From: Vicugna vicugna | Lineage: Eukaryota | Reading direction: 5' to 3' | Length of the DNA stretch: 64,000 nt | Assembly: GCA_013265495.1 (NCBI GenBank) | Contig: MU059902.1 | Coordinates: 4,361,862-4,425,861 of the forward strand | Part shown: positions 16,137 to 25,935 of the stretch, piece by piece | Layout of the letters: each line of letters starts with the position of its first letter | Position numbering within the stretch: the first letter of the stretch is position 1 | Made by a program: the position numbers and the translations under genes | Notes under the pieces: generated by a model | Databases searched by the model: none | What the model saw: only the letters and a program-made list of their open reading frames with translations | Told to the model about the DNA's origin: nothing

Positions 16137-16595
16137 ATTTATATATTTATATATGTATAGTAACCAGAAACAGCGACTCTGGCGGAAGAGATTCTCGCTC
16201 CTGCTTTCTGTACGACGTCTCCTCGCGGCTCGCGTGGCTGCAGCTCTGTCCCCAAGTCCTTCGGGTCAGTACATGGCACATAATGGTATTATTGGCACGG
16301 GTTCAGAATCAAAGTACAAATCCCAGCGTCCAGCGCGACCTCCTTCCTGTCCCTTCCCTCCGCCTCCAGGTCCTTCCTTCCCTCGCGGGTCTGCTTCCTG
16401 CTCCCCGAAGCAGCTCTGGGAGAAGGCCGTTCCCATAGGCAACAGCATCTTTATAAAAATATATTTGGCCTACAGCGTCCTGCTCTGCGAGTTCCCCACC
16501 GGCAAACAGAGGTGGTGGGCGCAGGGACCCTCCCCTTACATAGTTTAGTTTTAGGTTTTGTGGGGGGGGGTTTGTAATTTTTGATTTATTTTTTT

Positions 16596-16617
16596 TTACA
16601 GGTTCACCAACGGAATC
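16596..16617 (-). CDS. AJAP1: Alternative AJAP1 C-terminal coding segment (R)IPLVNL* at the start of the last exon, in frame with exon 4 when exon 5 is skipped
   Basis: strong acceptor ttttaatctcttcttgttttctctccacacag|G at 16617; CG|G ATT CCG TTG GTG AAC CTG TAA; matches recalled PIANP C-terminus NRIPLVNL. Confidence 0.75.
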
Positions 16618-17380
16618 CTGTGTGGAGAGAAAACAAGAAGAGATTAAAAGGCAGCAGGCCAGGGGCAGGGCATCTCGGCAGCCTCCCGAGCCTCCAGGGC
16701 GGGGCCCCTGCCCCTGGCTACGGACACCCGAGAGTCCCGGGGACACCCAAGGCTGCCTCGCGGGGCCTGGGCACCGGGAGTCGGTGCGCACGCCAGGAAT
16801 CCCGGGGGGAGTTGAGAGTTAATTACGGGGAAATTGGTGGAGGGGGGTCCCCCGCCTGTCCGAGATCGGGTGTGGGCTTCCCCAGAGGGGGCCAGACCAC
16901 CCTACATTAACTGTTGAGGGGCAGGGACACTGCACCCCAGACCTGCAGGTGACTGAGCGCACCCAGCACCCTGCTTGCTCTGGCCGCCAAGGCACAGAGG
17001 GGGGCCGCCAGCTCCATCCCTGGGCTGCGGGAAGCAGTGGAGTCCACTTCAGTCCACTACACAGCTAGGAGCTCGCTGAGGCTGGAACTCAGGGGAGGTC
17101 AACGGACTTCATCAGAAAAGCCACCTCCTGGGTCTGCCCAGGGGCTGATCTTGCTGGAGAGAGAAAGAGACGGTGAACCACCGTGCACACAGCTCAGGTC
17201 AGCCGGCTGCAAAGAAGCTGGCGGCTCTCGCCCCACCTGGGGGGTGCCACTTCGGAAAATGGAGACCCCAAGTCTTCCTGCTGCAAGGAGAGACCCCAAG
17301 GACAGCGTCCCCCTGGGAGTCAGAGAGCTTCAGCCGTCCTGGGCAGGGCCAGGGGAGTCGGGACGCCTCCCAGCTCAGCC

Positions 17381-17414
17381 CCGAGGGGCGCTGGCTCCGA
17401 GGGGCGCTGGCTCC
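17381..17414. repeat. Perfect 16-bp tandem duplication
   Basis: (ccgaggggcgctggct)x2+cc. Confidence 0.85.
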
Positions 17415-18123
17415 AAGACGCAGCTCTGTGATGAGGGTGGGGCAGGGTGTCTCTCTGCTGTCACTCAGAGTGCCCACCCGCGCCCCTACAACTCCCGGAA
17501 ATCAGGACCCTCAAAGGTGTGAGGAGGAATGATGGTGCATCCTCCTTCCACACAGACTAGGGGGTAGGTGCCTTCTCCTGAAGCAGAGAAGCCCCCTGGG
17601 TGCTCCTTGGTAGGACTTCAGGCTGAAGGGCACCCGGGTGTGGGGCACACCTGCAGGGGTGGTGGGAGCAGCGTCCCGGTCAGCACCGTCTCTGGCATCT
17701 TCTCCAAGAGCCTTGGTGGCCGAAGACCAGGGTAGGGGTGACGGCACCCATTCCCTCTCTAGGACCCCTCCCCGTCTGGATGACGAAGGCAGAGTCACCT
17801 TGACTTCCTCCTACATCCAAACGATGCCCGTTTGGGCAACTCTGGGAGGCCTCAAATAGAGCTTCTAATCACCTCCTGTGGGGCGGCCCGCCCTGCTGTG
17901 GGCAGGGGTGTCACCGGGTGGAATGGGACCGACATCCTGTCAGCTGTGTGCCGGACCGCCCTGGGCAGCTGCTCTCCAACCGTGCCCCGCCCCCGCCCCT
18001 CCTCCGCTCTCTGGGATTTGGGGTGGGGGGGGTTAGAAAGTGCAGTTGTTGAAATGAGAGAGGAACGTCCCTCTTGCATGTCTCTCTGCATTATAACCTT
18101 TTGAAAGTTAAAAAAAAAAAGTG

Positions 18124-18397
18124 GAGACAAATCCTCTGCGATCTCCCTGATACGAGGTCCCTGGAACTGTCAGATGCAGAGAGACGGAGGGCAGAGGGCT
18201 GGGTGAGGCGGATGCGGACACAATATGTCAGTCTGGGAAAGTGAGAAAAGTTCCGAGATGAACGATGGTGATGGTTTTCATAACAACTGTGACTGTATTT
18301 AATGCCACATAACTGCCCTGTTTAATGGTTCAAATGGTCAGTTTTTTGTTATGGACGTTCTACGACAATTTAAAAATTTAAAAAAATATTAAAAAAT
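18124..18397 (+). mobile_element. L1M (L1MB-like) 3' end fragment
   Basis: gaaaagttccgagatgaacgatggtgatgg...aatgccac...aatggttcaaatggtca...acaatttaaaaa resembles the recalled L1MB 3' terminus. Confidence 0.75.
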
Positions 18398-20201
18398 ACA
18401 GGGACCCTAAAAGCTGGGTCTGGTGACCCTCCCCCCGTCCTGGTGGCCTAGGACCGTCTTGGGTTTAAGCGGCTGCCCGTTGCCCCAGGGTGACGGCTGC
18501 TCTCAGATGGGCCGGGGTTGGACCGCGAGTCACAGGGCCTCCTTCCCTAAGAAGGGGGCTTTCCTCGGAGAGCCGCCGCCGGTGGCTTCCTTCCCACCCT
18601 TTATTCCGACCTTACACAGACAGACCAAGGGAGGCGCTGCTTCTGTTCTGTCTCCTGGGCTCTTTTCTTACAGACGTTATCTGCCACTTTGTTACTTAAA
18701 AGTCTTGGCTGCCTCTGCCGCGGGCTCCCTGGATCCTCCAGGACGAGGTCCCACCACCTCCACCCCATCCCCCCCAGTTACACTTCCAACTCCCAGTTTC
18801 CTCCAGTGGACTCTTCGGTCAACAGTCAAGTACAAACCACAGCAGCAGAGTCTTCAACAGGAAAGTTATCAACCACAGGCCCCTAAAGGACAAGACTCAC
18901 ACTGCGTCTCCGACAGAAAGCTGTTACCCTGGCCGCGCGGCCAGCGAGAAGCCGCTCACACCCTGAGCTCCCAGTTTCCCAGCAGGCTTTCACTAAAAAC
19001 AAAACCCCAAACCCTCTCACCTGCCTCTTTTTCTCTATAAAATAACCTCTCCTCTGTGCGTTGGACTTACCCGTGGCTTTTGTAGAGCCTGCTTGTTCCA
19101 AATTGCAATTCCTTTGCTGTTCTTGAATAAACCCACTTTTGCTGGTTTAACAAAACTAAACAAAACAAAAAAGCAGCCCCTGTACCCTGGCCTCAAAGCA
19201 TAAATCTCTGGCCTCAAATTCCCCACATCCCTGCTGACCTCCCCTCCCAGGGAGGCCTTCGTGAATACTGCCTCCTCTCCTAAACGTGTTCTGTTTCATT
19301 TCTGTCCATCAGGGCATCCGGCTCTGTGACTCCTCGGGCACAGGGCGACTGGCACTGGTGCCATCTGCACGTGTGTACGTCACATGTCACCCCAGGTGTC
19401 GCGGGTGCCCGCCGGGTCCCCGTGGGTTTGCCCAGGTTGCAGCTGAGCCTGGCCCGGGAGGGAAATCCACGTGGAGTGAAGCTCAGAGAAGAGGCATCTG
19501 TACGAGAGGAGCTTTGTCCTCGGCATCCTTATCTGCCAGAAGTGCCTACAGGTGAAGTCACGTGGGAGGATGGAGGGCAGGGCTCTGGGCCACTCGGGGG
19601 CCAGCCTCTTCCAAACCTACCAGCATCTGCTTCTCCCCAGCGTCTCAGGATGGTGCCAGCTCTGCACCTTGAATTGCCATTTGAACAGCGGTGCTGGCTT
19701 CTTGTAGAGGGGCTGGTAGGTCACCTGCAAGGAGGAGGAGGCGACCCCGGCCACGCTCCAGGCCGCCAGTTCCTGCTGCCTGCACTCAGCTCATGGAGGC
19801 GGCTCGGGTTGTCCTGCTCCGGAGGCTCAGCGCGAGAGCCTCTCAGCCGGGCACTGACCCCAGGAGGGCTGGAGAGAGCGCGTCCTGCCTGGAGGAGGGC
19901 ACCGGCGGCGGTGTGGACGCAAGATTCTGGGCCAGAACGGGAGGCTTCCGCTTCAGAGATCCGAGAGATGAGGACGTGGGATAAATTCTGACTTGGGAGA
20001 AACGAGTGCCCTCTGCTGCCTGGCGGGGGAGCCTCGGCTCCCTGGGCCCGCCGGGCTGCAAACCGCACGGGGTCCTGGGCTTGAAGGTCAGCGCCTGCTT
20101 GCGCAGAGCGAAGAGAACAGCAGGCAGACTGCGGTAGGGCCCAGAGTGCGGGAGCTGCGGCGAGTGCCCCGCACCCCGGGAAGGCTCCTTCCCCAGTGCT
20201 C

Positions 20202-20234
20202 TGCTCGGCGGCGCCGGTGCTCGGCGGCGCCGGT
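20202..20234. repeat. Perfect 16-bp tandem duplication
   Basis: (tgctcggcggcgccgg)x2+t. Confidence 0.85.
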
Positions 20235-21453
20235 CCTCAGCCTGGGGAGAGAGGAGTTTCCAGAAGGGGCTGGATGTTGCTTTGAAGACAGCGTTCCTTT
20301 GAATTACAGAAGCTGGATATTCTGTTAATGTATTTTTTAGAACAACGCGGGAAGGCTCAGGTGCGTTTCTTGTGTTTTATTAGTTATGTCTCTGGTGTGT
20401 TTTTGAAGATAGTCACCACACGTGGTTCATTTCGCACTGGCTTCGGTGCAAGGGCTTTATGGCTTGCGAGGCTCGGCTCGGAATGATGTGGCCTTGGCCG
20501 GAGGCAAGATCTGAGCACTAATGAGGTTTTCTGAAGTTTACTTGCTAACATGAAAAATGACAGGAAATTAGCCCACGAGCCGATGGGAGGCATGGGTCCA
20601 AGGGCCCTTTCCTGGGAGCACCTTTTCTCATCCAGAGCATCCAATCGGGCCCCACCACGCAGGGGGTCTGGGGCTAGAGTCTGATGGAATCTATCGTAAG
20701 GGCTGAACCCAGGGAGACAGGCTTAACTGCTGCCCAGGCTGGGCTGTCTGCGTCCACGAGCCCTGGTCCTGCCGTCAACCTGCCGGCAGGGAAGCGGGCT
20801 CACTGGGGCGGGGCTCGGGTCCCCAGTGTGCCGGGGTCAGTATGAGCACGCAAGACGGGCGGTGGGTAACAAACAGCTATATCATCATTAAAAATGCATT
20901 TGGAGAGGCTTACCAGCCATGCAAGAGATAAATCTCTCCGCTGGCTCTTAAACCTTAATTAAAAGTTTTAGTATTAATTGCTATTTATTTAAGGGACAAT
21001 AAGTGCATCAGAAAATCTGAGCCGTTCTCTGCTCCATCCTCACGTCCAGGCGTTGACTGCAGGAATCAGGGCTGCTTCAAGTCTGAACGCGTTCCCCCGG
21101 TGAGTGATAAGCAGTCCGCCCGACGCTCAGGGACGGGATATGGAAACACTTATCGAGGACGGTCAGGGCTGCTGGCATGGCCCTCCTGGTCCGTGTCTGC
21201 GGGGGGGGGGGAGGCGGAGAGAGCAGATGCTCTGAGTCCGTGGGCGCCGTGGCTGAGCGTGGTTGCGCTCGGAGCAAGTCCCATGTGTTCTGCTCGCCTC
21301 CCCACACCAGCCACCTGAGATCACGGCGACTCGGTCAAGCGCTGGGGACACAGGTATCCTCTCCTGAAGACGGGCCTGGTCCTGAAACAGCTCCTTGAGA
21401 GACTTGGGAAGTGTGGCCCAGACACCTCAAGGAGAAGTGGCCCCCGGGGCCCA

Positions 21454-21543
21454 TCTGGGGTCACACACGAGGAGAGCCCACCCCAGTGTCCGTGGGTCTC
21501 TGGGGTCACACACACGGAGGGCCTGCCCCAGTGTTTGGGGGGT
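21454..21543. repeat. Degenerate ~45-bp tandem duplication
   Basis: tctggggtcacacac...ccccagtgt...ggtc occurs twice. Confidence 0.7.
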
Positions 21544-22938
21544 CCCTCTGTGCCCTGTGCTGCTAGAAAGGGAACTGGGCTTGAGACACGAAGGTCTTTG
21601 GAAGATGAGGAGGGAATAAAAGCATTTTCTCCCAATTTGATTTGCATTTAAAGTCAGAGCTGTGGCTCCCTGTCCGCTGGGGCTGAGGAGGTCCCCAGCC
21701 CAGGCTTTCGGACACGCAGGACCTGCCTCCCACCTGCGTGGCTCCCTGCCCTGTAGAGTCAGGCTGAAGGGCCCCCACGGGGATGCCAAAGTGGCTGGAA
21801 ACCCGCCCTCATCTCCTACCACCCAACTCTCATCCCATCTGGGGCCAGGCCGGAGCTGGAACGGGGACAGAGGCATGGCCACAGGGGACTGCGATCAAGG
21901 CTCTTTGGACGGTGGGCAGAGCGGGGCCCAGAGCCAGGTGACCGGGGGACGTGTGGCCCCACCACTTACAACCTGACTGTAAACTCAGGCAGTCACTTCA
22001 CCCCCCACGTCTCAGGCTCCTGTCTGTCAGATAGGATTGCCGAGAAGACTGAGTTTTGAGACGTCGAGAGTGCTCCAATGAGCTGCGGCTGGAACGTCCA
22101 CAGGAGGGGACCGTGTGCCCCCGGCCCCCAGCCCGGCGGAGGCCTCCCCGGAGTGGAAGCACGTCCACCTCCAGGCCTGGGGGCCCGTGGGTCTCAGAGG
22201 AAGAGAGCGAGGTCTTTGATGGGCACGGCCAGCATCTCCCAGCTCCACGTCTGGTGTGTTTGTGCATTTTTGAAATCCTGACAGAGACGCTGGCGCCCCC
22301 GTGACCGCCCTGCCGAGGCCCCTCAGGACAGCAGGAGTTCTGCCACTAATAAGCAGGCCCCCCGCCGCCAGCCCAGCTGGGACTCCAGCGGGAGCCCTGT
22401 CCCCGGCCTTAACGAGGCCAGTCGCATCCAGGCAGACAAAGGTACGAGCTGCTGGCGGACGGGCCGCACCAGGGCATCTGGCCCTCGACTGCGGGGACAG
22501 ACCTCCTCTTACAGCCTCAGCAAAGGCCTTTGGGCGGGAGGGGGACTCACTTTCCATCTGAATCTCATTAGGTTCCTTCACCCAGCGGCTACTCTGATCA
22601 CTCAGTGGGCTCTACTGGCTTCGGGGCAGGAGGTGAGGGTGGGAGATGTGACTTGGAGCAAACAGGCCGCTCGTTAGGGCTGGGATTAGGACCTGATCAT
22701 TCATTCCTACTTCTCAAAGCAGCTGGCTCCCCCGGCCCTGGCTAAGCGCTGTAAGCAGAGTCCCCTGGGGGTCACGAGTGCACCCCAAGAAGACGCCTCC
22801 CCCGCCCCGAGCCTTCCCCCGACTCTGACAATGACGTTCCCCCTGCAGCCCCCACATCAGAAGGTCAACAAAAGTAAGAAAGAACATTTTCAAATATCTG
22901 TAGCCCTAGAAATTGGTTTCCTGCTGGTAGAAGGGACC

Positions 22939-22946
22939 TGACGTCA
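22939..22946. promoter_or_regulatory. Full palindromic CRE in intron 5
   Basis: TGACGTCA. Confidence 0.3.
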
Positions 22947-23755
22947 CGTTCAGGAGGAAGCTCTGGGGAGGGAAGATGCTGTCTGTGGATGAGCGAGACG
23001 AGCGTCCTCTGGAAACACAGCGTCAGAAAGGAAAACACAGAGCCCTGGCCGCAGCCACTGCCTGTGCGTGCGGGACGCGCAGCCCCGGGGCCGGGACGCT
23101 CTCCCCCCAGCAGCCCGACGTTCGGGAGGCTCAGCTCAGAAGAAAGCAATTTACCGTTAGCATTAAAGTCAATATCACTGAAAGCAAACCGAATGTTCCC
23201 ACCCAGCAGAGCATGGAAAATTCAGAGCGTTCTGGTGCCGGTCTCCGGCTGCAAATTAGTAGATGCCTCAGCTCTTCACTTCCCTCCTTTATCATCTTCT
23301 TTCTTATCTCTTATTTTTATATTTCAAAATTGTATTTTAATTCTGCTCTGTGCCCTCCCCGCCCCCCGCCCCGTAAAGACACGTGATGGAGGCCCGGCCT
23401 GGCGTCCGCCCGCGGCGCCGCGGCCCTGTCTCCTCTTGTCGTGGAAACAGGAGCTGCGCTTGGAGCTCGCTTGGAGAACTGGGGTCCCCGGCGCTGCAGG
23501 GGAGCGGCACCCGCAGAACGACCGGGTGCCGAGTGGGGGCTCGAGGGTGTCCATCGGTCCCTTCCAGGGGGACCCGGGGGCATTTCTCATGAGTGCAGCA
23601 GAGAGACCACAAGCCCAGCCCTCTGGCTGGCAACCAGGGCGGTGATGCCCTCAGAATTCTACCTGCCACATCCGGAAGGGAGGCGGGGTGAGGGGGTGGA
23701 GGGAAGGTCAGGCAAAGGGACAATTAATCAAGGTCCCAGAAAAAGAGGTACTTAC

Positions 23756-23814
23756 CATGAAACAGACACATGGCGTCTGCCCTGCCCCCAGGAGGTAAAA
23801 AAGACTTCGGCCAG
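23756..23814 (-). other. AJAP1: AJAP1 exon 5 post-stop segment (59 nt) ending at a consensus donor
   Basis: TCATG|gtaagta donor, GT at 23755-23754; total exon 5 length 132 nt. Confidence 0.88.
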
Positions 23815-23887
23815 TCAGCAGGAGATTTCAAACCACTTCTCAGACACAAAGGCCACAGGAATAAGATGCCGGTCAGAAGAGGAGGGT
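23815..23887 (-). CDS. AJAP1: AJAP1 exon 5 coding part, (R)PSSSDRHLIPVAFVSEKWFEISC* (canonical C-terminus)
   Basis: acceptor ctttctgcctgctgcag|A; 73 nt = 1+24 codons ending in TGA at 23817-23815; CG (exon 4)+A gives Arg; matches recalled canonical C-terminus. Confidence 0.96.
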
Positions 23888-23980
23888 CTGCAGCAGGCAG
23901 AAAGGCGGGCTGGCACGTGCTGGCACCCGGCACCCCACCAGCCGGCCGGCTTGGGCCCGCCCCCGAAGACTGGCTTCTTA

Positions 23981-24090
23981 GGAGGAGGGTGTCGCTCTGG
24001 GCAGGGCGTGCGCTGCGCACGCGCGAGGTCCTGGGTTCAGTCCCCAGGACCTCCGTTAAACAAACAGACAAGCCTAGTTACCCCCTCCCC
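23981..24090 (+). mobile_element. tRNA-Ala-derived SINE (Vic-1-like), strongly GC-shifted copy in intron 4
   Basis: GAGGGTGTCGCTC...CGAGGTCCTGGGTTCAGTCCCC...GTTAAACAAACAGACAAGCCTAGTTACCCCC aligns end to end with the 9807-9954 copy. Confidence 0.85.
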
Positions 24091-25692
24091 TACCGATAAG
24101 GAAAAGGACCCTGGCTTCTCGGGTAGAGGGGAGCCCCAGGGAGGTGATGCTCGGCCCGGCCCCGCTGGCCTCCCCGCCCGGAGCCGGCCGGTGTTCCCTC
24201 CCGCCCTGTCCCCGGAGGTCACACAGCCTGAGGCGTCCGTGCAAGGCGGAATCTGGTGCTGAGGCCCATGGTGGTGCCATCTCCAGGTTTTAGTTTTTGA
24301 CTTGCAGGATGAGAGCCAGGCTCAGCGTCTCTGCCTCCACCCGCTTCACTGCATGTTATAGGGAGGGCGGGGCCTGGCGCCTAAAATGCCGCCCCCGCCC
24401 CGGTGTTTCAACCCTTTGAGACTGAGCTGCCACTTCCCAAGGCCGGCGAGAGCCAACAGAGCATCACCTTCAAACAGAAAGCAAGAACCTGTTCCGCCCG
24501 GGGTTCCCACGCCAGCCAGCTGTGCGCGCCCTGCCCGCGGCCAGGGGCGGAGGGTGAGGGCTGTGACACCCCGAGACCCACCCGCCCCTCTTCCCCCAAA
24601 GGCGGAAGCGCTGGCCGGCCGGGGCTGGCACCCAAACGGGCACACACACGTCAAGGTGACGGTCTGAGAATCCGTGCACACACGGCCCTTGGCGAGGCTG
24701 GGATGCAGCCCACGAGCTCCCCAAACGTCGCTGAGTGGAAGCCATGGTATTTAGAAGGACCATCCTGAGGTTTCTGCTGCCCCCTTCTCCTCTGGGGAGG
24801 GGGCATCTCAGACAGAGAACACGGCGGAGTCCGGCTGTAAGTAAGTATTAAAGGAGCTCCCACTCGCTCTCGGGGACAGGACAAGGCGACATCAACTCCG
24901 GGAACAGCCCCTGCATCTCCTGGACGTGGGTGCAGGGCGGAGCCCCTCAGGGCACTGGGGCAGCGTCCCGGCTTCCCCACTGCTGACCGTGGGCCCTCAA
25001 GTCCACCCGGGGTCCTGCTCATTTCTTCCTAAGATTTTTAAGTTGTGGGATAAATTTTTTTTTATTATTATTTACAAAATGCTGCATGAGTGAGGGCTCA
25101 CTCAAAAAAAAAAAAACTAGTTTATTGCTGTTTAATCTAATTCTGGATGAACCTTCAGAAGTGACTCAAGGGTTTCTTGCACACCCCCGGGGCAGTGAGA
25201 GGCGTGTCTTCTTTGAGGGATTGTGTATGATTAATAAAAAAGGGCACTTAACAACCAGGAGTCGGGCTGGTGTTTGATATTTTCGCTAGATTTGCTGCCG
25301 ACATTTTATTGATGGGGGTTCAGAGATGCTGGTGGGGGTGGGGCGATCAACACTCGTGGGTATCTGGGGAGCTCGAGACTGCGAGGCTGGCTTTGGACTC
25401 TGGGCAGTGAGACTTGCTCAGCCTCCGAGACGTGGGACCCAGGAGCGCGCAGGACAGTCGGCGCGTAGCCAGGTGCCGGGGTCTGGACTGGACCCCGACC
25501 GCGGCCGCGGCCCCTCCCTGGAGGGCAACAACAACACCTGCTTGCGTCTGCCCCGCCCCTCTCGCCTCCCCCCTCCCGGCCGCCTGCACGTGCGAGGGCC
25601 GCCGGCAGGACGGGAAGGCCGCCTCACCCCGAGCACAGCCCGGCACCCCCAGGAGCGGGCGGCGACCGCGCCCGGCTGGCGCCTGTGCTTAC

Positions 25693-25935
25693 CGGTTCCC
25701 GTTGAACGTGGATTTGTACTCCCCGGTCGGGCGCAGCGTCTCGTCGGTGTACACGGGCACGGACGCCCGGACACACTCGTGCGAGCACTGGAGGGTCTCG
25801 TTGTAGGCCGTGAAGATGTCCAGGCTGCTGGGCACGCGGGCGGGCGTGAAGTCCGTCAGGTTCTGGCAGCTCTCCTCCTGCTGGGCGGCCTTCCGCTGGT
25901 GGCCGTTCCTGCGCGCGTTCCCGCTCTGGGCACAG
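25693..25935 (-). CDS. AJAP1: AJAP1 exon 4, cytoplasmic domain CAQSGNARRNGHQRK...SSLDIFTAYNETLQCSHECVRASVPVYTDETLRPTGEYKSTFNGNR
   Basis: 243-nt exon (1+80x3+2); acceptor gtctctccggcccag|, donor CCG|gtaagc; translation matches recalled AJAP1 cytoplasmic tail. Confidence 0.97.

What the first reader, a model, noticed from the sequence alone, without database searches (positions are those of the whole stretch)
16596..25693. Hidden PIANP-like C-terminus (RIPLVNL*) at the start of the nominally non-coding last exon of AJAP1
Seen: exon 4 ends ...AAC CG| and the last exon starts |G ATT CCG TTG GTG AAC CTG TAA behind a strong acceptor, so skipping exon 5 gives ...STFNGNRIPLVNL*. Recalled knowledge: the paralog PIANP (shared AJAP1/PANP C-terminal family; both bind the GABA-B1a sushi domain) ends ...QLNRIPLVNL, while the canonical AJAP1 protein ends ...EKWFEISC. 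Inference: IPLVNL is the ancestral terminus of the family, with a class II PDZ-ligand-like V-x-L end, and exon 5 is a cassette that replaces it. An eight-residue match beginning exactly at the splice junction is unlikely to be chance. The isoform may already exist as a predicted model, which I cannot check.
Basis: partly seen in the sequence, partly recalled or inferred. Interest (0 to 1): 0.88.

Follow-up and report, generated by a model that had tools for sequence, protein, structure and literature searches.

The report
Conserved alternative C-terminus of AJAP1
Skipping the stop-containing exon 5 of the synaptic adhesion gene AJAP1 gives a protein ending in IPLVNL, a tail kept from sharks to mammals and already present as predicted isoforms in public databases, though I found no paper on it.

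Summary
On the minus strand, exon 4 ends AAC CG|gtaagc at 25693. The last exon starts cacag|G ATT CCG TTG GTG AAC CTG TAA at 16617-16596. Exon 5 (23887-23756, 132 nt) carries the canonical stop (...EKWFEISC*). Skipping it gives ...STFNGNRIPLVNL*.

This is not chance. Shark, finch and squirrel loci have the same three-exon layout. Every sense-codon difference in those loci and in hamster is synonymous.

At least 18 AJAP1 protein sequences ending NGNRIPLVNL, from 14 species, are already in NCBI, UniProt or nr. They cover shark, frogs, lizards, alligator, birds and hedgehog; most are 'isoform X2'. So the isoform is known as a computational model. None of the roughly 8.4 million papers searched contains the peptide.

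Exceptions:
- Chinese hamster has lost the stop (TAA to TAC).
- Danionella reads ISLENL.
- Two other teleosts and a snake show nothing recognisable within 10 kb.

Exon 5 encodes L397/I398, part of the published dendritic/basolateral sorting signal, so skipping removes it.

Not tested:
- The PIANP C-terminus: PIANP was never retrieved.
- PDZ binding.

The scan holds only a same-window note on readthrough; I found that idea is not conserved.

The parts
25693..25935 (-). AJAP1 exon 4 (243 nt, phases 1 and 2). It encodes most of the cytoplasmic domain, including three Tyr sorting residues. The donor is AACCG|gtaagc.
   Evidence: PF15298, E 2.3e-52; 69-87% identity to the 29 AJAP1 representatives with E <= 1e-30; Y352, Y370 and Y381 lie in this exon's product in 412-aa orthologs.
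23756..23887 (-). AJAP1 exon 5, a 132-nt cassette. It encodes R-PSSSDRHLIPVAFVSEKWFEISC, then TGA at 23817-23815, then 59 nt of conserved post-stop sequence up to the donor TCATG|gtaagt.
   Evidence: The LI of DRHLIPV corresponds to L397/I398 of the published sorting-signal mutant (PMC11235169).
23888..23930 (-). Intron sequence just upstream of exon 5. It is conserved between the window, finch and shark, but not squirrel or salmonid.
   Evidence: by inspection of the aligned flanks.
16618..16655 (-). Acceptor of the last exon: a pyrimidine-rich tract followed by cacAG.
   Evidence: The AG is invariant in all five species aligned.
16596..16617 (-). First 22 nt of the last exon: G ATT CCG TTG GTG AAC CTG TAA. 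With exon 5 skipped it encodes (R)IPLVNL-stop. With exon 5 included it is 3' UTR.
   Evidence: Proteins ending NGNRIPLVNL are listed.
16274..16306 (-). 3' UTR element CTGAAC..TGTGCCAATAATRCCAYTATGTGCCA, nearly invariant from teleosts to mammals. It marks the orthologous last exon in fish.

Best explanation
The AJAP1 3' end has two alternative, anciently conserved protein C-termini, chosen by inclusion or skipping of exon 5.

With exon 5 included, translation ends in that exon at ...DRHLIPVAFVSEKWFEISC, and the last exon is untranslated.

With exon 5 skipped, the phase-2 donor of exon 4 joins the last exon. Its first 22 nt complete the Arg codon and add IPLVNL-stop.

Shown here:
- the frame and the splice signals in the window;
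- the same exon order in shark, bird and rodent DNA;
- purely synonymous variation in the six sense codons outside teleosts;
- deposited gene models with this tail in 14 species.

Inferred:
- the junction is used in this mammal;
- the short isoform loses the L397/I398 dileucine-type part of the basolateral/dendritic sorting signal while keeping the three Tyr motifs, and so differs in sorting or partner binding;
- its free -V-N-L end may engage class II PDZ domains.
For: Window anatomy.

Same exon 4 / exon 5 (EKWFEISC*) / IPLVNL* order in other genomes:
- Scyliorhinus, with exon 6 about 77 kb downstream of exon 4;
- Ictidomys and Chloebia.

Codon pattern:
- window and squirrel: ATT CCG TTG GTG AAC CTG TAA;
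- finch: CCA;
- shark: ATC CCA CTG GTG AAT CTG TAA;
- hamster: TTG for the last Leu.
That is five distinct changes, all synonymous. Only 15 of 54 possible single-base changes are synonymous, so all five being synonymous has a chance of about 0.0017 under neutrality.

Identity falls right after the stop. Against shark it drops from 18/22 to 10/30. Against finch it drops from 21/22 to 16/30.

Deposited proteins ending NGNRIPLVNL include:
- XP_060057299.1, Erinaceus X2;
- XP_064381464.1, Dromaius X2;
- XP_031761037.1 and KAE8593199-202, Xenopus tropicalis;
- XP_062821792.1 and the older XP_016853126.1, Anolis X3;
- KYO31388.1, Alligator isoform A;
- models from Paroedura, Hemicordylus, Discoglossus, Anomaloglossus, Hirundo, Turdus, Chloebia, Bambusicola and Scyliorhinus.

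Sorting signal: the AJAP1-BLSM mutant that loses dendritic restriction changes Y352, Y370, Y381, L397 and I398 (PMC11235169). In 412-aa orthologs, L397/I398 are the LI encoded by exon 5.
Against: - No transcript evidence for this species.
- The support behind the deposited models could not be inspected. That NCBI 'X2' variants require RNA-seq support for their introns is my knowledge of the Gnomon pipeline, not something seen here.
- In the Chinese hamster (CHO-K1 assembly) the stop is TAC, so the frame runs on for 12 more residues. That would bury the IPLVNL end.
- Danionella reads ISLENL*.
- Nothing recognisable was found within 10 kb downstream in Salvelinus, Tetraodon or a snake.
- Sceloporus (IPVVNL) and Mycteria (IPLANL) carry conservative replacements.
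- No paper mentions the peptide.
- The one published AJAP1 splice-variant study found here (PMC5155531) used a reverse primer in exon 5, so it could not have seen this isoform.
Confidence: 0.78

Rival explanations
1. The 22 nt are conserved as RNA, for example as an acceptor-proximal splicing enhancer or a 3' UTR element. Exon-5 skipping would be splicing noise that annotation pipelines occasionally pick up, and no IPLVNL protein would matter.
For: The same last exon holds a clearly non-coding element conserved down to teleosts, so deep UTR conservation does occur in this gene. The post-stop part of exon 5 is also conserved without coding. Hamster lost the stop. Teleosts do not keep the peptide.
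Against: Outside teleosts, all five distinct substitutions fall on synonymous positions, and the stop stays at the same codon in shark, finch, squirrel and the window. Conservation ends at the stop. Independent annotation projects in shark, frogs, reptiles, birds and a mammal all produced the same junction. The shark model spans a 77-kb intron to reach a 7-codon exon, which an ab initio predictor would rarely choose without a transcript hint; that last point is inference.
Confidence: 0.1
2. The switch matters mainly for mRNA fate rather than for the peptide. With exon 5 included, the stop lies upstream of the last exon junction at about the distance that triggers nonsense-mediated decay. Skipping moves the stop into the last exon.
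For: The stop is followed by 54-61 nt before the exon 5 donor in the window, squirrel, finch, shark and salmonid. That is at the commonly quoted 50-55 nt boundary, which is established knowledge and was not tested here.
Against: The exon-5-included form is the canonical, abundantly detected protein (PMC5155531, PMC11235169), so it is not efficiently destroyed. An mRNA-fate role would not explain amino-acid-level conservation of IPLVNL. The two roles could coexist.
Confidence: 0.07
3. IPLVNL is reached by translational readthrough of the exon 5 UGA (note s1-213996), not by exon skipping.
For: In the window, exon 5 is 132 nt. The frame after TGA-C is open and runs into IPLVNL*.
Against: Exon 5 is 131 nt in squirrel and finch, 127 nt in shark and 134 nt in salmonid. 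In squirrel, finch and shark, readthrough enters the last exon in another frame. The frame match is therefore particular to this lineage.
Confidence: 0.02

Closest known systems
Predicted AJAP1 'isoform X2/X3/isoform A' models in RefSeq and GenBank (e.g. XP_060057299.1 Erinaceus, XP_064381464.1 Dromaius, XP_031761037.1 Xenopus tropicalis, XP_016853126.1 Anolis, KYO31388.1 Alligator)
   Same: Identical architecture and tail...FNGNR joined to IPLVNL-stop, with exon 5 skipped.
   Different: They are computational models in other species. I could not check whether this species or human carries such a model. None has been studied experimentally in the papers I could search.
Canonical AJAP1/shrew-1 isoform 1 (411-412 aa) and the published variants of Klemmt et al. 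2016 (PMC5155531)
   Same: Same gene and the same exons up to exon 4. The last exon is used as 3' UTR.
   Different: The canonical protein ends ...DRHLIPVAFVSEKWFEISC, encoded by exon 5. The published variants are N-terminal (E1a use, E2 skipping). The PCR design anchored in E5 excluded E5-skipped transcripts.
PIANP (PANP, Leda-1), the paralog sharing Pfam PF15298
   Same: Same family domain. The Pfam profile ends at the Arg that spans the exon 4 junction. PIANP is reported to lack AJAP1's dendritic sorting motifs (PMC12314290).
GRIN1 (NMDA receptor GluN1) C2/C2' switch
   Same: A mechanistic analogue, from my own knowledge. Removing a stop-containing C-terminal cassette lets translation continue into sequence that is otherwise 3' UTR, giving a short alternative tail with a PDZ-type end and different trafficking.
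   Different: Unrelated protein. GRIN1 uses an alternative acceptor rather than whole-exon skipping. Its function has been demonstrated, whereas for AJAP1 it is inferred.

Membership tests
AJAP1 (Pfam PF15298, AJAP1_PANP_C) | Significant match of the cytoplasmic domain to PF15298 | tested here: met
   E 2.3e-52, 178.7 bits against a cut-off of 27, profile positions 119-203 of 204.
AJAP1 (Pfam PF15298, AJAP1_PANP_C) | Orthology to proteins named AJAP1, including the canonical tail EKWFEISC | tested here: met
   the 29 strong representatives are 69-87% identical, with P0001-P0004 at 84-87%. Hits are named adherens junction-associated protein 1. Exon 5 encodes the canonical tail.
Exon-5-skipped AJAP1 isoform (database 'isoform X2' type) | Phase-2 donor after AAC CG, and an acceptor followed by G + IPLVNL codons + stop | tested here: met
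   The same arrangement is present in shark, finch and squirrel DNA.
Exon-5-skipped AJAP1 isoform (database 'isoform X2' type) | Transcripts carrying the exon4-exon6 junction in this species | not testable with these tools
Runs that hold parts of exon 4 and of the last exon exist.
Exon-5-skipped AJAP1 isoform (database 'isoform X2' type) | Protein-level constraint on the six codons | tested here: met
   five distinct synonymous and no non-synonymous differences among window, squirrel, hamster, finch and shark. Exceptions are hamster stop loss, Danionella ISLENL, and IPVVNL / IPLANL in two sauropsids.
PIANP-type C-terminus | PIANP proteins end in ...NRIPLVNL | not testable with these tools
   PIANP never appeared. 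The Atlas gave cluster names only or nothing. No paper prints the string.
Class II PDZ-binding C-terminus (hydrophobic-x-hydrophobic-COOH) | The last three residues fit the pattern | tested here: met
   By inspection, V-N-L-COOH fits. So does the canonical I-S-C-COOH under the ELM class-2 pattern as I recall it, so the fit does not distinguish the two tails.
Class II PDZ-binding C-terminus (hydrophobic-x-hydrophobic-COOH) | Binding to a PDZ domain | not testable with these tools
   Requires pull-down or peptide-array experiments.
Programmed stop-codon readthrough | A post-stop frame that is open and in frame across species | tested here: not met
   exon 5 is 132 nt only in the window. It is 131, 131, 127 and 134 nt elsewhere. 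Where the last exon could be joined (squirrel, finch, shark), the frame into it is lost.

The most novel reading that the evidence does not exclude
Exon 5 of AJAP1 is a regulated switch between two forms. One is a dendrite- or basolateral-restricted form carrying the LI sorting motif and the EKWFEISC end. The other is a PIANP-like form (IPLVNL end, no LI motif) that is sorted differently, for example also to axons, and engages different scaffolds. That would change whether AJAP1 meets GABA-B1a receptors in trans or in cis. The existing C-terminal HA knock-in and antibody studies would have tracked only the first form.
Probability: 0.2. Interest if true: 0.7.

Novelty: already known. Interest (0 to 1): 0.42.

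Why it matters
AJAP1 recruits presynaptic GABA-B receptors across the synapse, and loss-of-function variants cause epilepsy and developmental delay (PMC11235169). Current models treat it as one protein whose cytoplasmic signals confine it to dendrites.

A second C-terminus lacks part of that signal and has been kept for roughly 450 million years. The date is my own knowledge of the shark-tetrapod split. This tail means that expression constructs, the C-terminal HA knock-in and variant interpretation in exon 5 cover only one isoform.

The isoform is already in the databases, so this is not a discovery of a new object. It is an unstudied, cheaply testable feature of a disease gene.

Tried and rejected
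1. RNA junction evidence. Two run searches found RNA runs holding parts of exon 4 and of the last exon.

2. PIANP C-terminus. None of these returned a PIANP sequence:
- phmmer of exon 4 against 1.84 billion representatives;
- three word-indexed searches with an IPLVNL-ending AJAP1, with region and length windows chosen to admit a roughly 280-aa protein;
- two Atlas searches;
- paper searches for the peptide and its sub-strings;
- PIANP papers.

3. Readthrough to IPLVNL: rejected because the frame is not conserved.

4. Isoform look-ups by exact protein for hedgehog, Xenopus, emu and alligator found nothing on record. The tool notes that only the longest product of a gene is kept.

5. Teleost tail. 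Only Danionella has a recognisable homologue (ISLENL*). Salmonid and pufferfish loci have none, although the downstream UTR element is present in them.

6. Jakob et al. 2006, the paper on the sorting motifs, is not held.
Full report
**What is in the window**

The gene lies on the minus strand. The 22-mer GATTCCGTTGGTGAACCTGTAA occurs once, at 16596-16617, and in none of 100 shuffles. It follows a long pyrimidine tract and cacAG.

Exon 4 runs from 25935 to 25693 and ends ...TTC AAC GGG AAC CG|gtaagc. Its translation...EYKSTFNGN, matches Pfam PF15298 (AJAP1/PANP C-terminus) at E 2.3e-52. The match covers profile positions 119-203 of 204.

A six-frame scan finds KWFEIS once. The surrounding exon is 23887-23756, 132 nt. 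It has the acceptor ctgctgcag|A, encodes (R)PSSSDRHLIPVAFVSEKWFEISC followed by TGA at 23817-23815, then 59 further nt and the donor TCATG|gtaagt.

Joining exon 4 directly to the last exon gives CG|G ATT CCG TTG GTG AAC CTG TAA, that is ...STFNGNRIPLVNL-stop.

**Is it more than chance?**

I fetched the orthologous DNA from other species through proteins found in the searches.

In the cat shark Scyliorhinus torazame (L001), exon 4 ends AAC CG|gtaagg. An exon encoding ...ERQLIPVPFVSEKWFEISC* lies 56 kb downstream. A further 21 kb on, ttctttccag|G ATC CCA CTG GTG AAT CTG TAA encodes IPLVNL*.

The thirteen-lined ground squirrel (L002) and the Gouldian finch (L003) have the same three-exon order.

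The six sense codons differ between window, squirrel, hamster, finch and shark at five distinct positions. All five changes are synonymous. Only 15 of the 54 possible single-base changes are synonymous, so five out of five has a neutral expectation of about 0.0017.

Identity to the window collapses right after the stop. For shark it is 18/22 in the ORF and 10/30 in the next 30 nt. For finch it is 21/22 and then 16/30. This is the signature of selection on a peptide and its stop, not merely on an acceptor or a UTR element.

**Is the isoform already known?**

Yes, as computational models.

- A full HMMER scan with the exon 4 product returned two representatives ending NGNRIPLVNL.
- Word-indexed searches and a cluster look-up then gave at least 18 such sequences from 14 species. 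Sceloporus and Mycteria add variant tails.
- Mammal: Erinaceus europaeus isoform X2 (XP_060057299.1).
- Birds: Dromaius X2 (XP_064381464.1), Hirundo, Turdus, Chloebia, Bambusicola, and Mycteria (IPLANL).
- Reptiles: Alligator isoform A (KYO31388.1), Anolis X3 (XP_062821792.1 and the older XP_016853126.1), Paroedura X2, Hemicordylus X2, and Sceloporus X2 (IPVVNL).
- Frogs: Xenopus tropicalis X2 (XP_031761037.1 and KAE8593199-202), Discoglossus, Anomaloglossus.
- Shark: Scyliorhinus.

From my knowledge of NCBI's pipeline, alternative 'X' variants are issued only when transcript or RNA-seq alignments support their introns. I could not inspect those records, so this is inference.

In the literature I found nothing. 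No paper among about 8.4 million holds IPLVNL or its sub-strings in this context. The one study of AJAP1/shrew-1 splice variants (PMC5155531) states that the ORF runs from E1 to E5 and that E6/E6a only alter the UTR. It amplified with a reverse primer in E5, so an E5-skipped transcript was invisible to it.

**Limits of the conservation**

- In the Chinese hamster (CHO-K1 assembly, L008) the acceptor and IPLVNL are intact, but the stop reads TAC. The frame continues for 12 residues. That would bury the carboxy-terminal leucine. It is one assembly of a cell line, so I do not generalise to mouse or rat.
- In teleosts the orthologous last exon can be located by a 33-nt UTR element that is nearly invariant from fish to mammals. 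Danionella reads ISLENL* at the exon start. I found nothing recognisable in Salvelinus or Tetraodon, nor within 10 kb in a snake.
- The tail is therefore conserved in cartilaginous fish and most tetrapods sampled, but not universally.

**What I could not test**

Junction reads in this species. RNA runs that hold parts of exon 4 and of the last exon exist. I did not try again.

The PIANP terminus. PIANP never came back from any protein search. The Atlas only named a 'PILR alpha-associated neural protein' cluster as a top look-alike of the IPLVNL isoform, without sequence. A tail-only query gave nothing.

What the data establish without PIANP is that both AJAP1 tails already existed in the common ancestor of sharks and tetrapods.

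**How it most likely works**

Exon 5 is a stop-carrying cassette.

- Inclusion gives the canonical tail. That tail contains the LI of DRHLIPV.
- In 412-aa orthologs these residues are L397 and I398. They are two of the five residues mutated in the AJAP1-BLSM construct (Y352, Y370, Y381, L397, I398). That construct loses dendritic restriction in hippocampal neurons (PMC11235169).
- The three tyrosines are in exon 4 and are kept in both isoforms.
- Skipping therefore yields a protein about 17 residues shorter. It lacks the dileucine-type element and the EKWFEISC end, and it terminates in -L-V-N-L.

A review from the same field states that PIANP, unlike AJAP1, lacks dendritic sorting motifs and is found in both axons and dendrites (PMC12314290). 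A plausible but untested consequence is relaxed or altered polarised sorting of the short isoform.

The PDZ idea is weaker. V-N-L fits the class II pattern, but so does I-S-C under the ELM class-2 expression as I recall it.

The intron just upstream of exon 5 is conserved between shark, finch and the window. The 59-nt post-stop part of exon 5 is conserved from shark to mammals. Both fit a regulated alternative exon. This is inference.

**Rivals**

(a) Non-coding conservation plus splicing noise. The synonymous-only pattern, the fixed stop and the independent gene models argue against it. The hamster and teleost exceptions keep it alive at about 0.1.

(b) A switch that matters for mRNA decay. 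The canonical stop sits 54-61 nt before the last junction in all five species measured, which is at the usual NMD boundary. This could coexist with the coding role but does not explain peptide conservation.

(c) Readthrough of the UGA (note s1-213996). It is true for the window, where exon 5 is 132 nt and the frame is open. But exon 5 is 131, 131, 127 and 134 nt in squirrel, finch, shark and salmonid, so the frame match is lineage-specific.

**Verdict**

The feature is real and anciently conserved. It is almost certainly a coding alternative C-terminus of AJAP1.

It is already present in public databases as predicted isoforms in many species, including one mammal, so I class it as already known as an object. 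No paper I could find has studied it.

Interest is moderate. It bears directly on how the sorting signals, tagged alleles and exon 5 variants of a neurodevelopmental disease gene are interpreted, and the tests are simple.

Noticed in passing
window 16274-16306 (minus strand); L003 ~24200, L004 23025-23058, L005 12422-12467, L006 15446-15470: A 33-nt 3' UTR element, CTGAAC..TGTGCCAATAATRCCAYTATGTGCCA, is nearly invariant from teleosts to mammals. It lies about 310 nt into the last exon. It contains GTGCCAA, which I recall as a miR-96/1271-type seed match (own knowledge, not tested).
   Followed up: partly
window 23756-23814 and 23888-23930 (minus strand); L001 68240-68410; L003 19330-19470: The 59 nt after the canonical stop inside exon 5 are conserved from shark to mammals. 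About 40 nt of the upstream intron, including a GCACGTGC palindrome, are conserved in window, finch and shark, but not in squirrel or salmonid. This may be splicing control of the cassette.
   Followed up: partly
window 23815-23817 relative to the junction at 23756; the same in L001-L004: The canonical AJAP1 stop lies in the penultimate exon, 54-61 nt upstream of the last exon junction, in every species measured. That is right at the usual NMD distance rule.
   Followed up: partly
L008 23751-23810 (Chinese hamster, CHO-K1 assembly): The IPLVNL codons are intact but the stop is TAC, extending the frame to IPLVNLYKQNNKTKNYKT*. It is unknown whether mouse and rat share this or whether it is peculiar to this assembly.
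   Followed up: no
In squirrel, finch, shark and salmonid it is 131, 131, 127 and 134 nt, so this is not a conserved property.
   Followed up: yes
L001 90100-92312 (Scyliorhinus, downstream of the AJAP1 last-exon start): A long tandem array with a period of about 29 nt showed up as a ladder of self-matches in blastn.
   Followed up: no
L006 15073-15094 (Danionella): The teleost homologue of the last-exon start reads G ATC TCA CTG GAA AAC CTG TGA, giving (R)ISLENL*. The ORF length and the stop position are kept, with two amino-acid replacements.
   Followed up: partly
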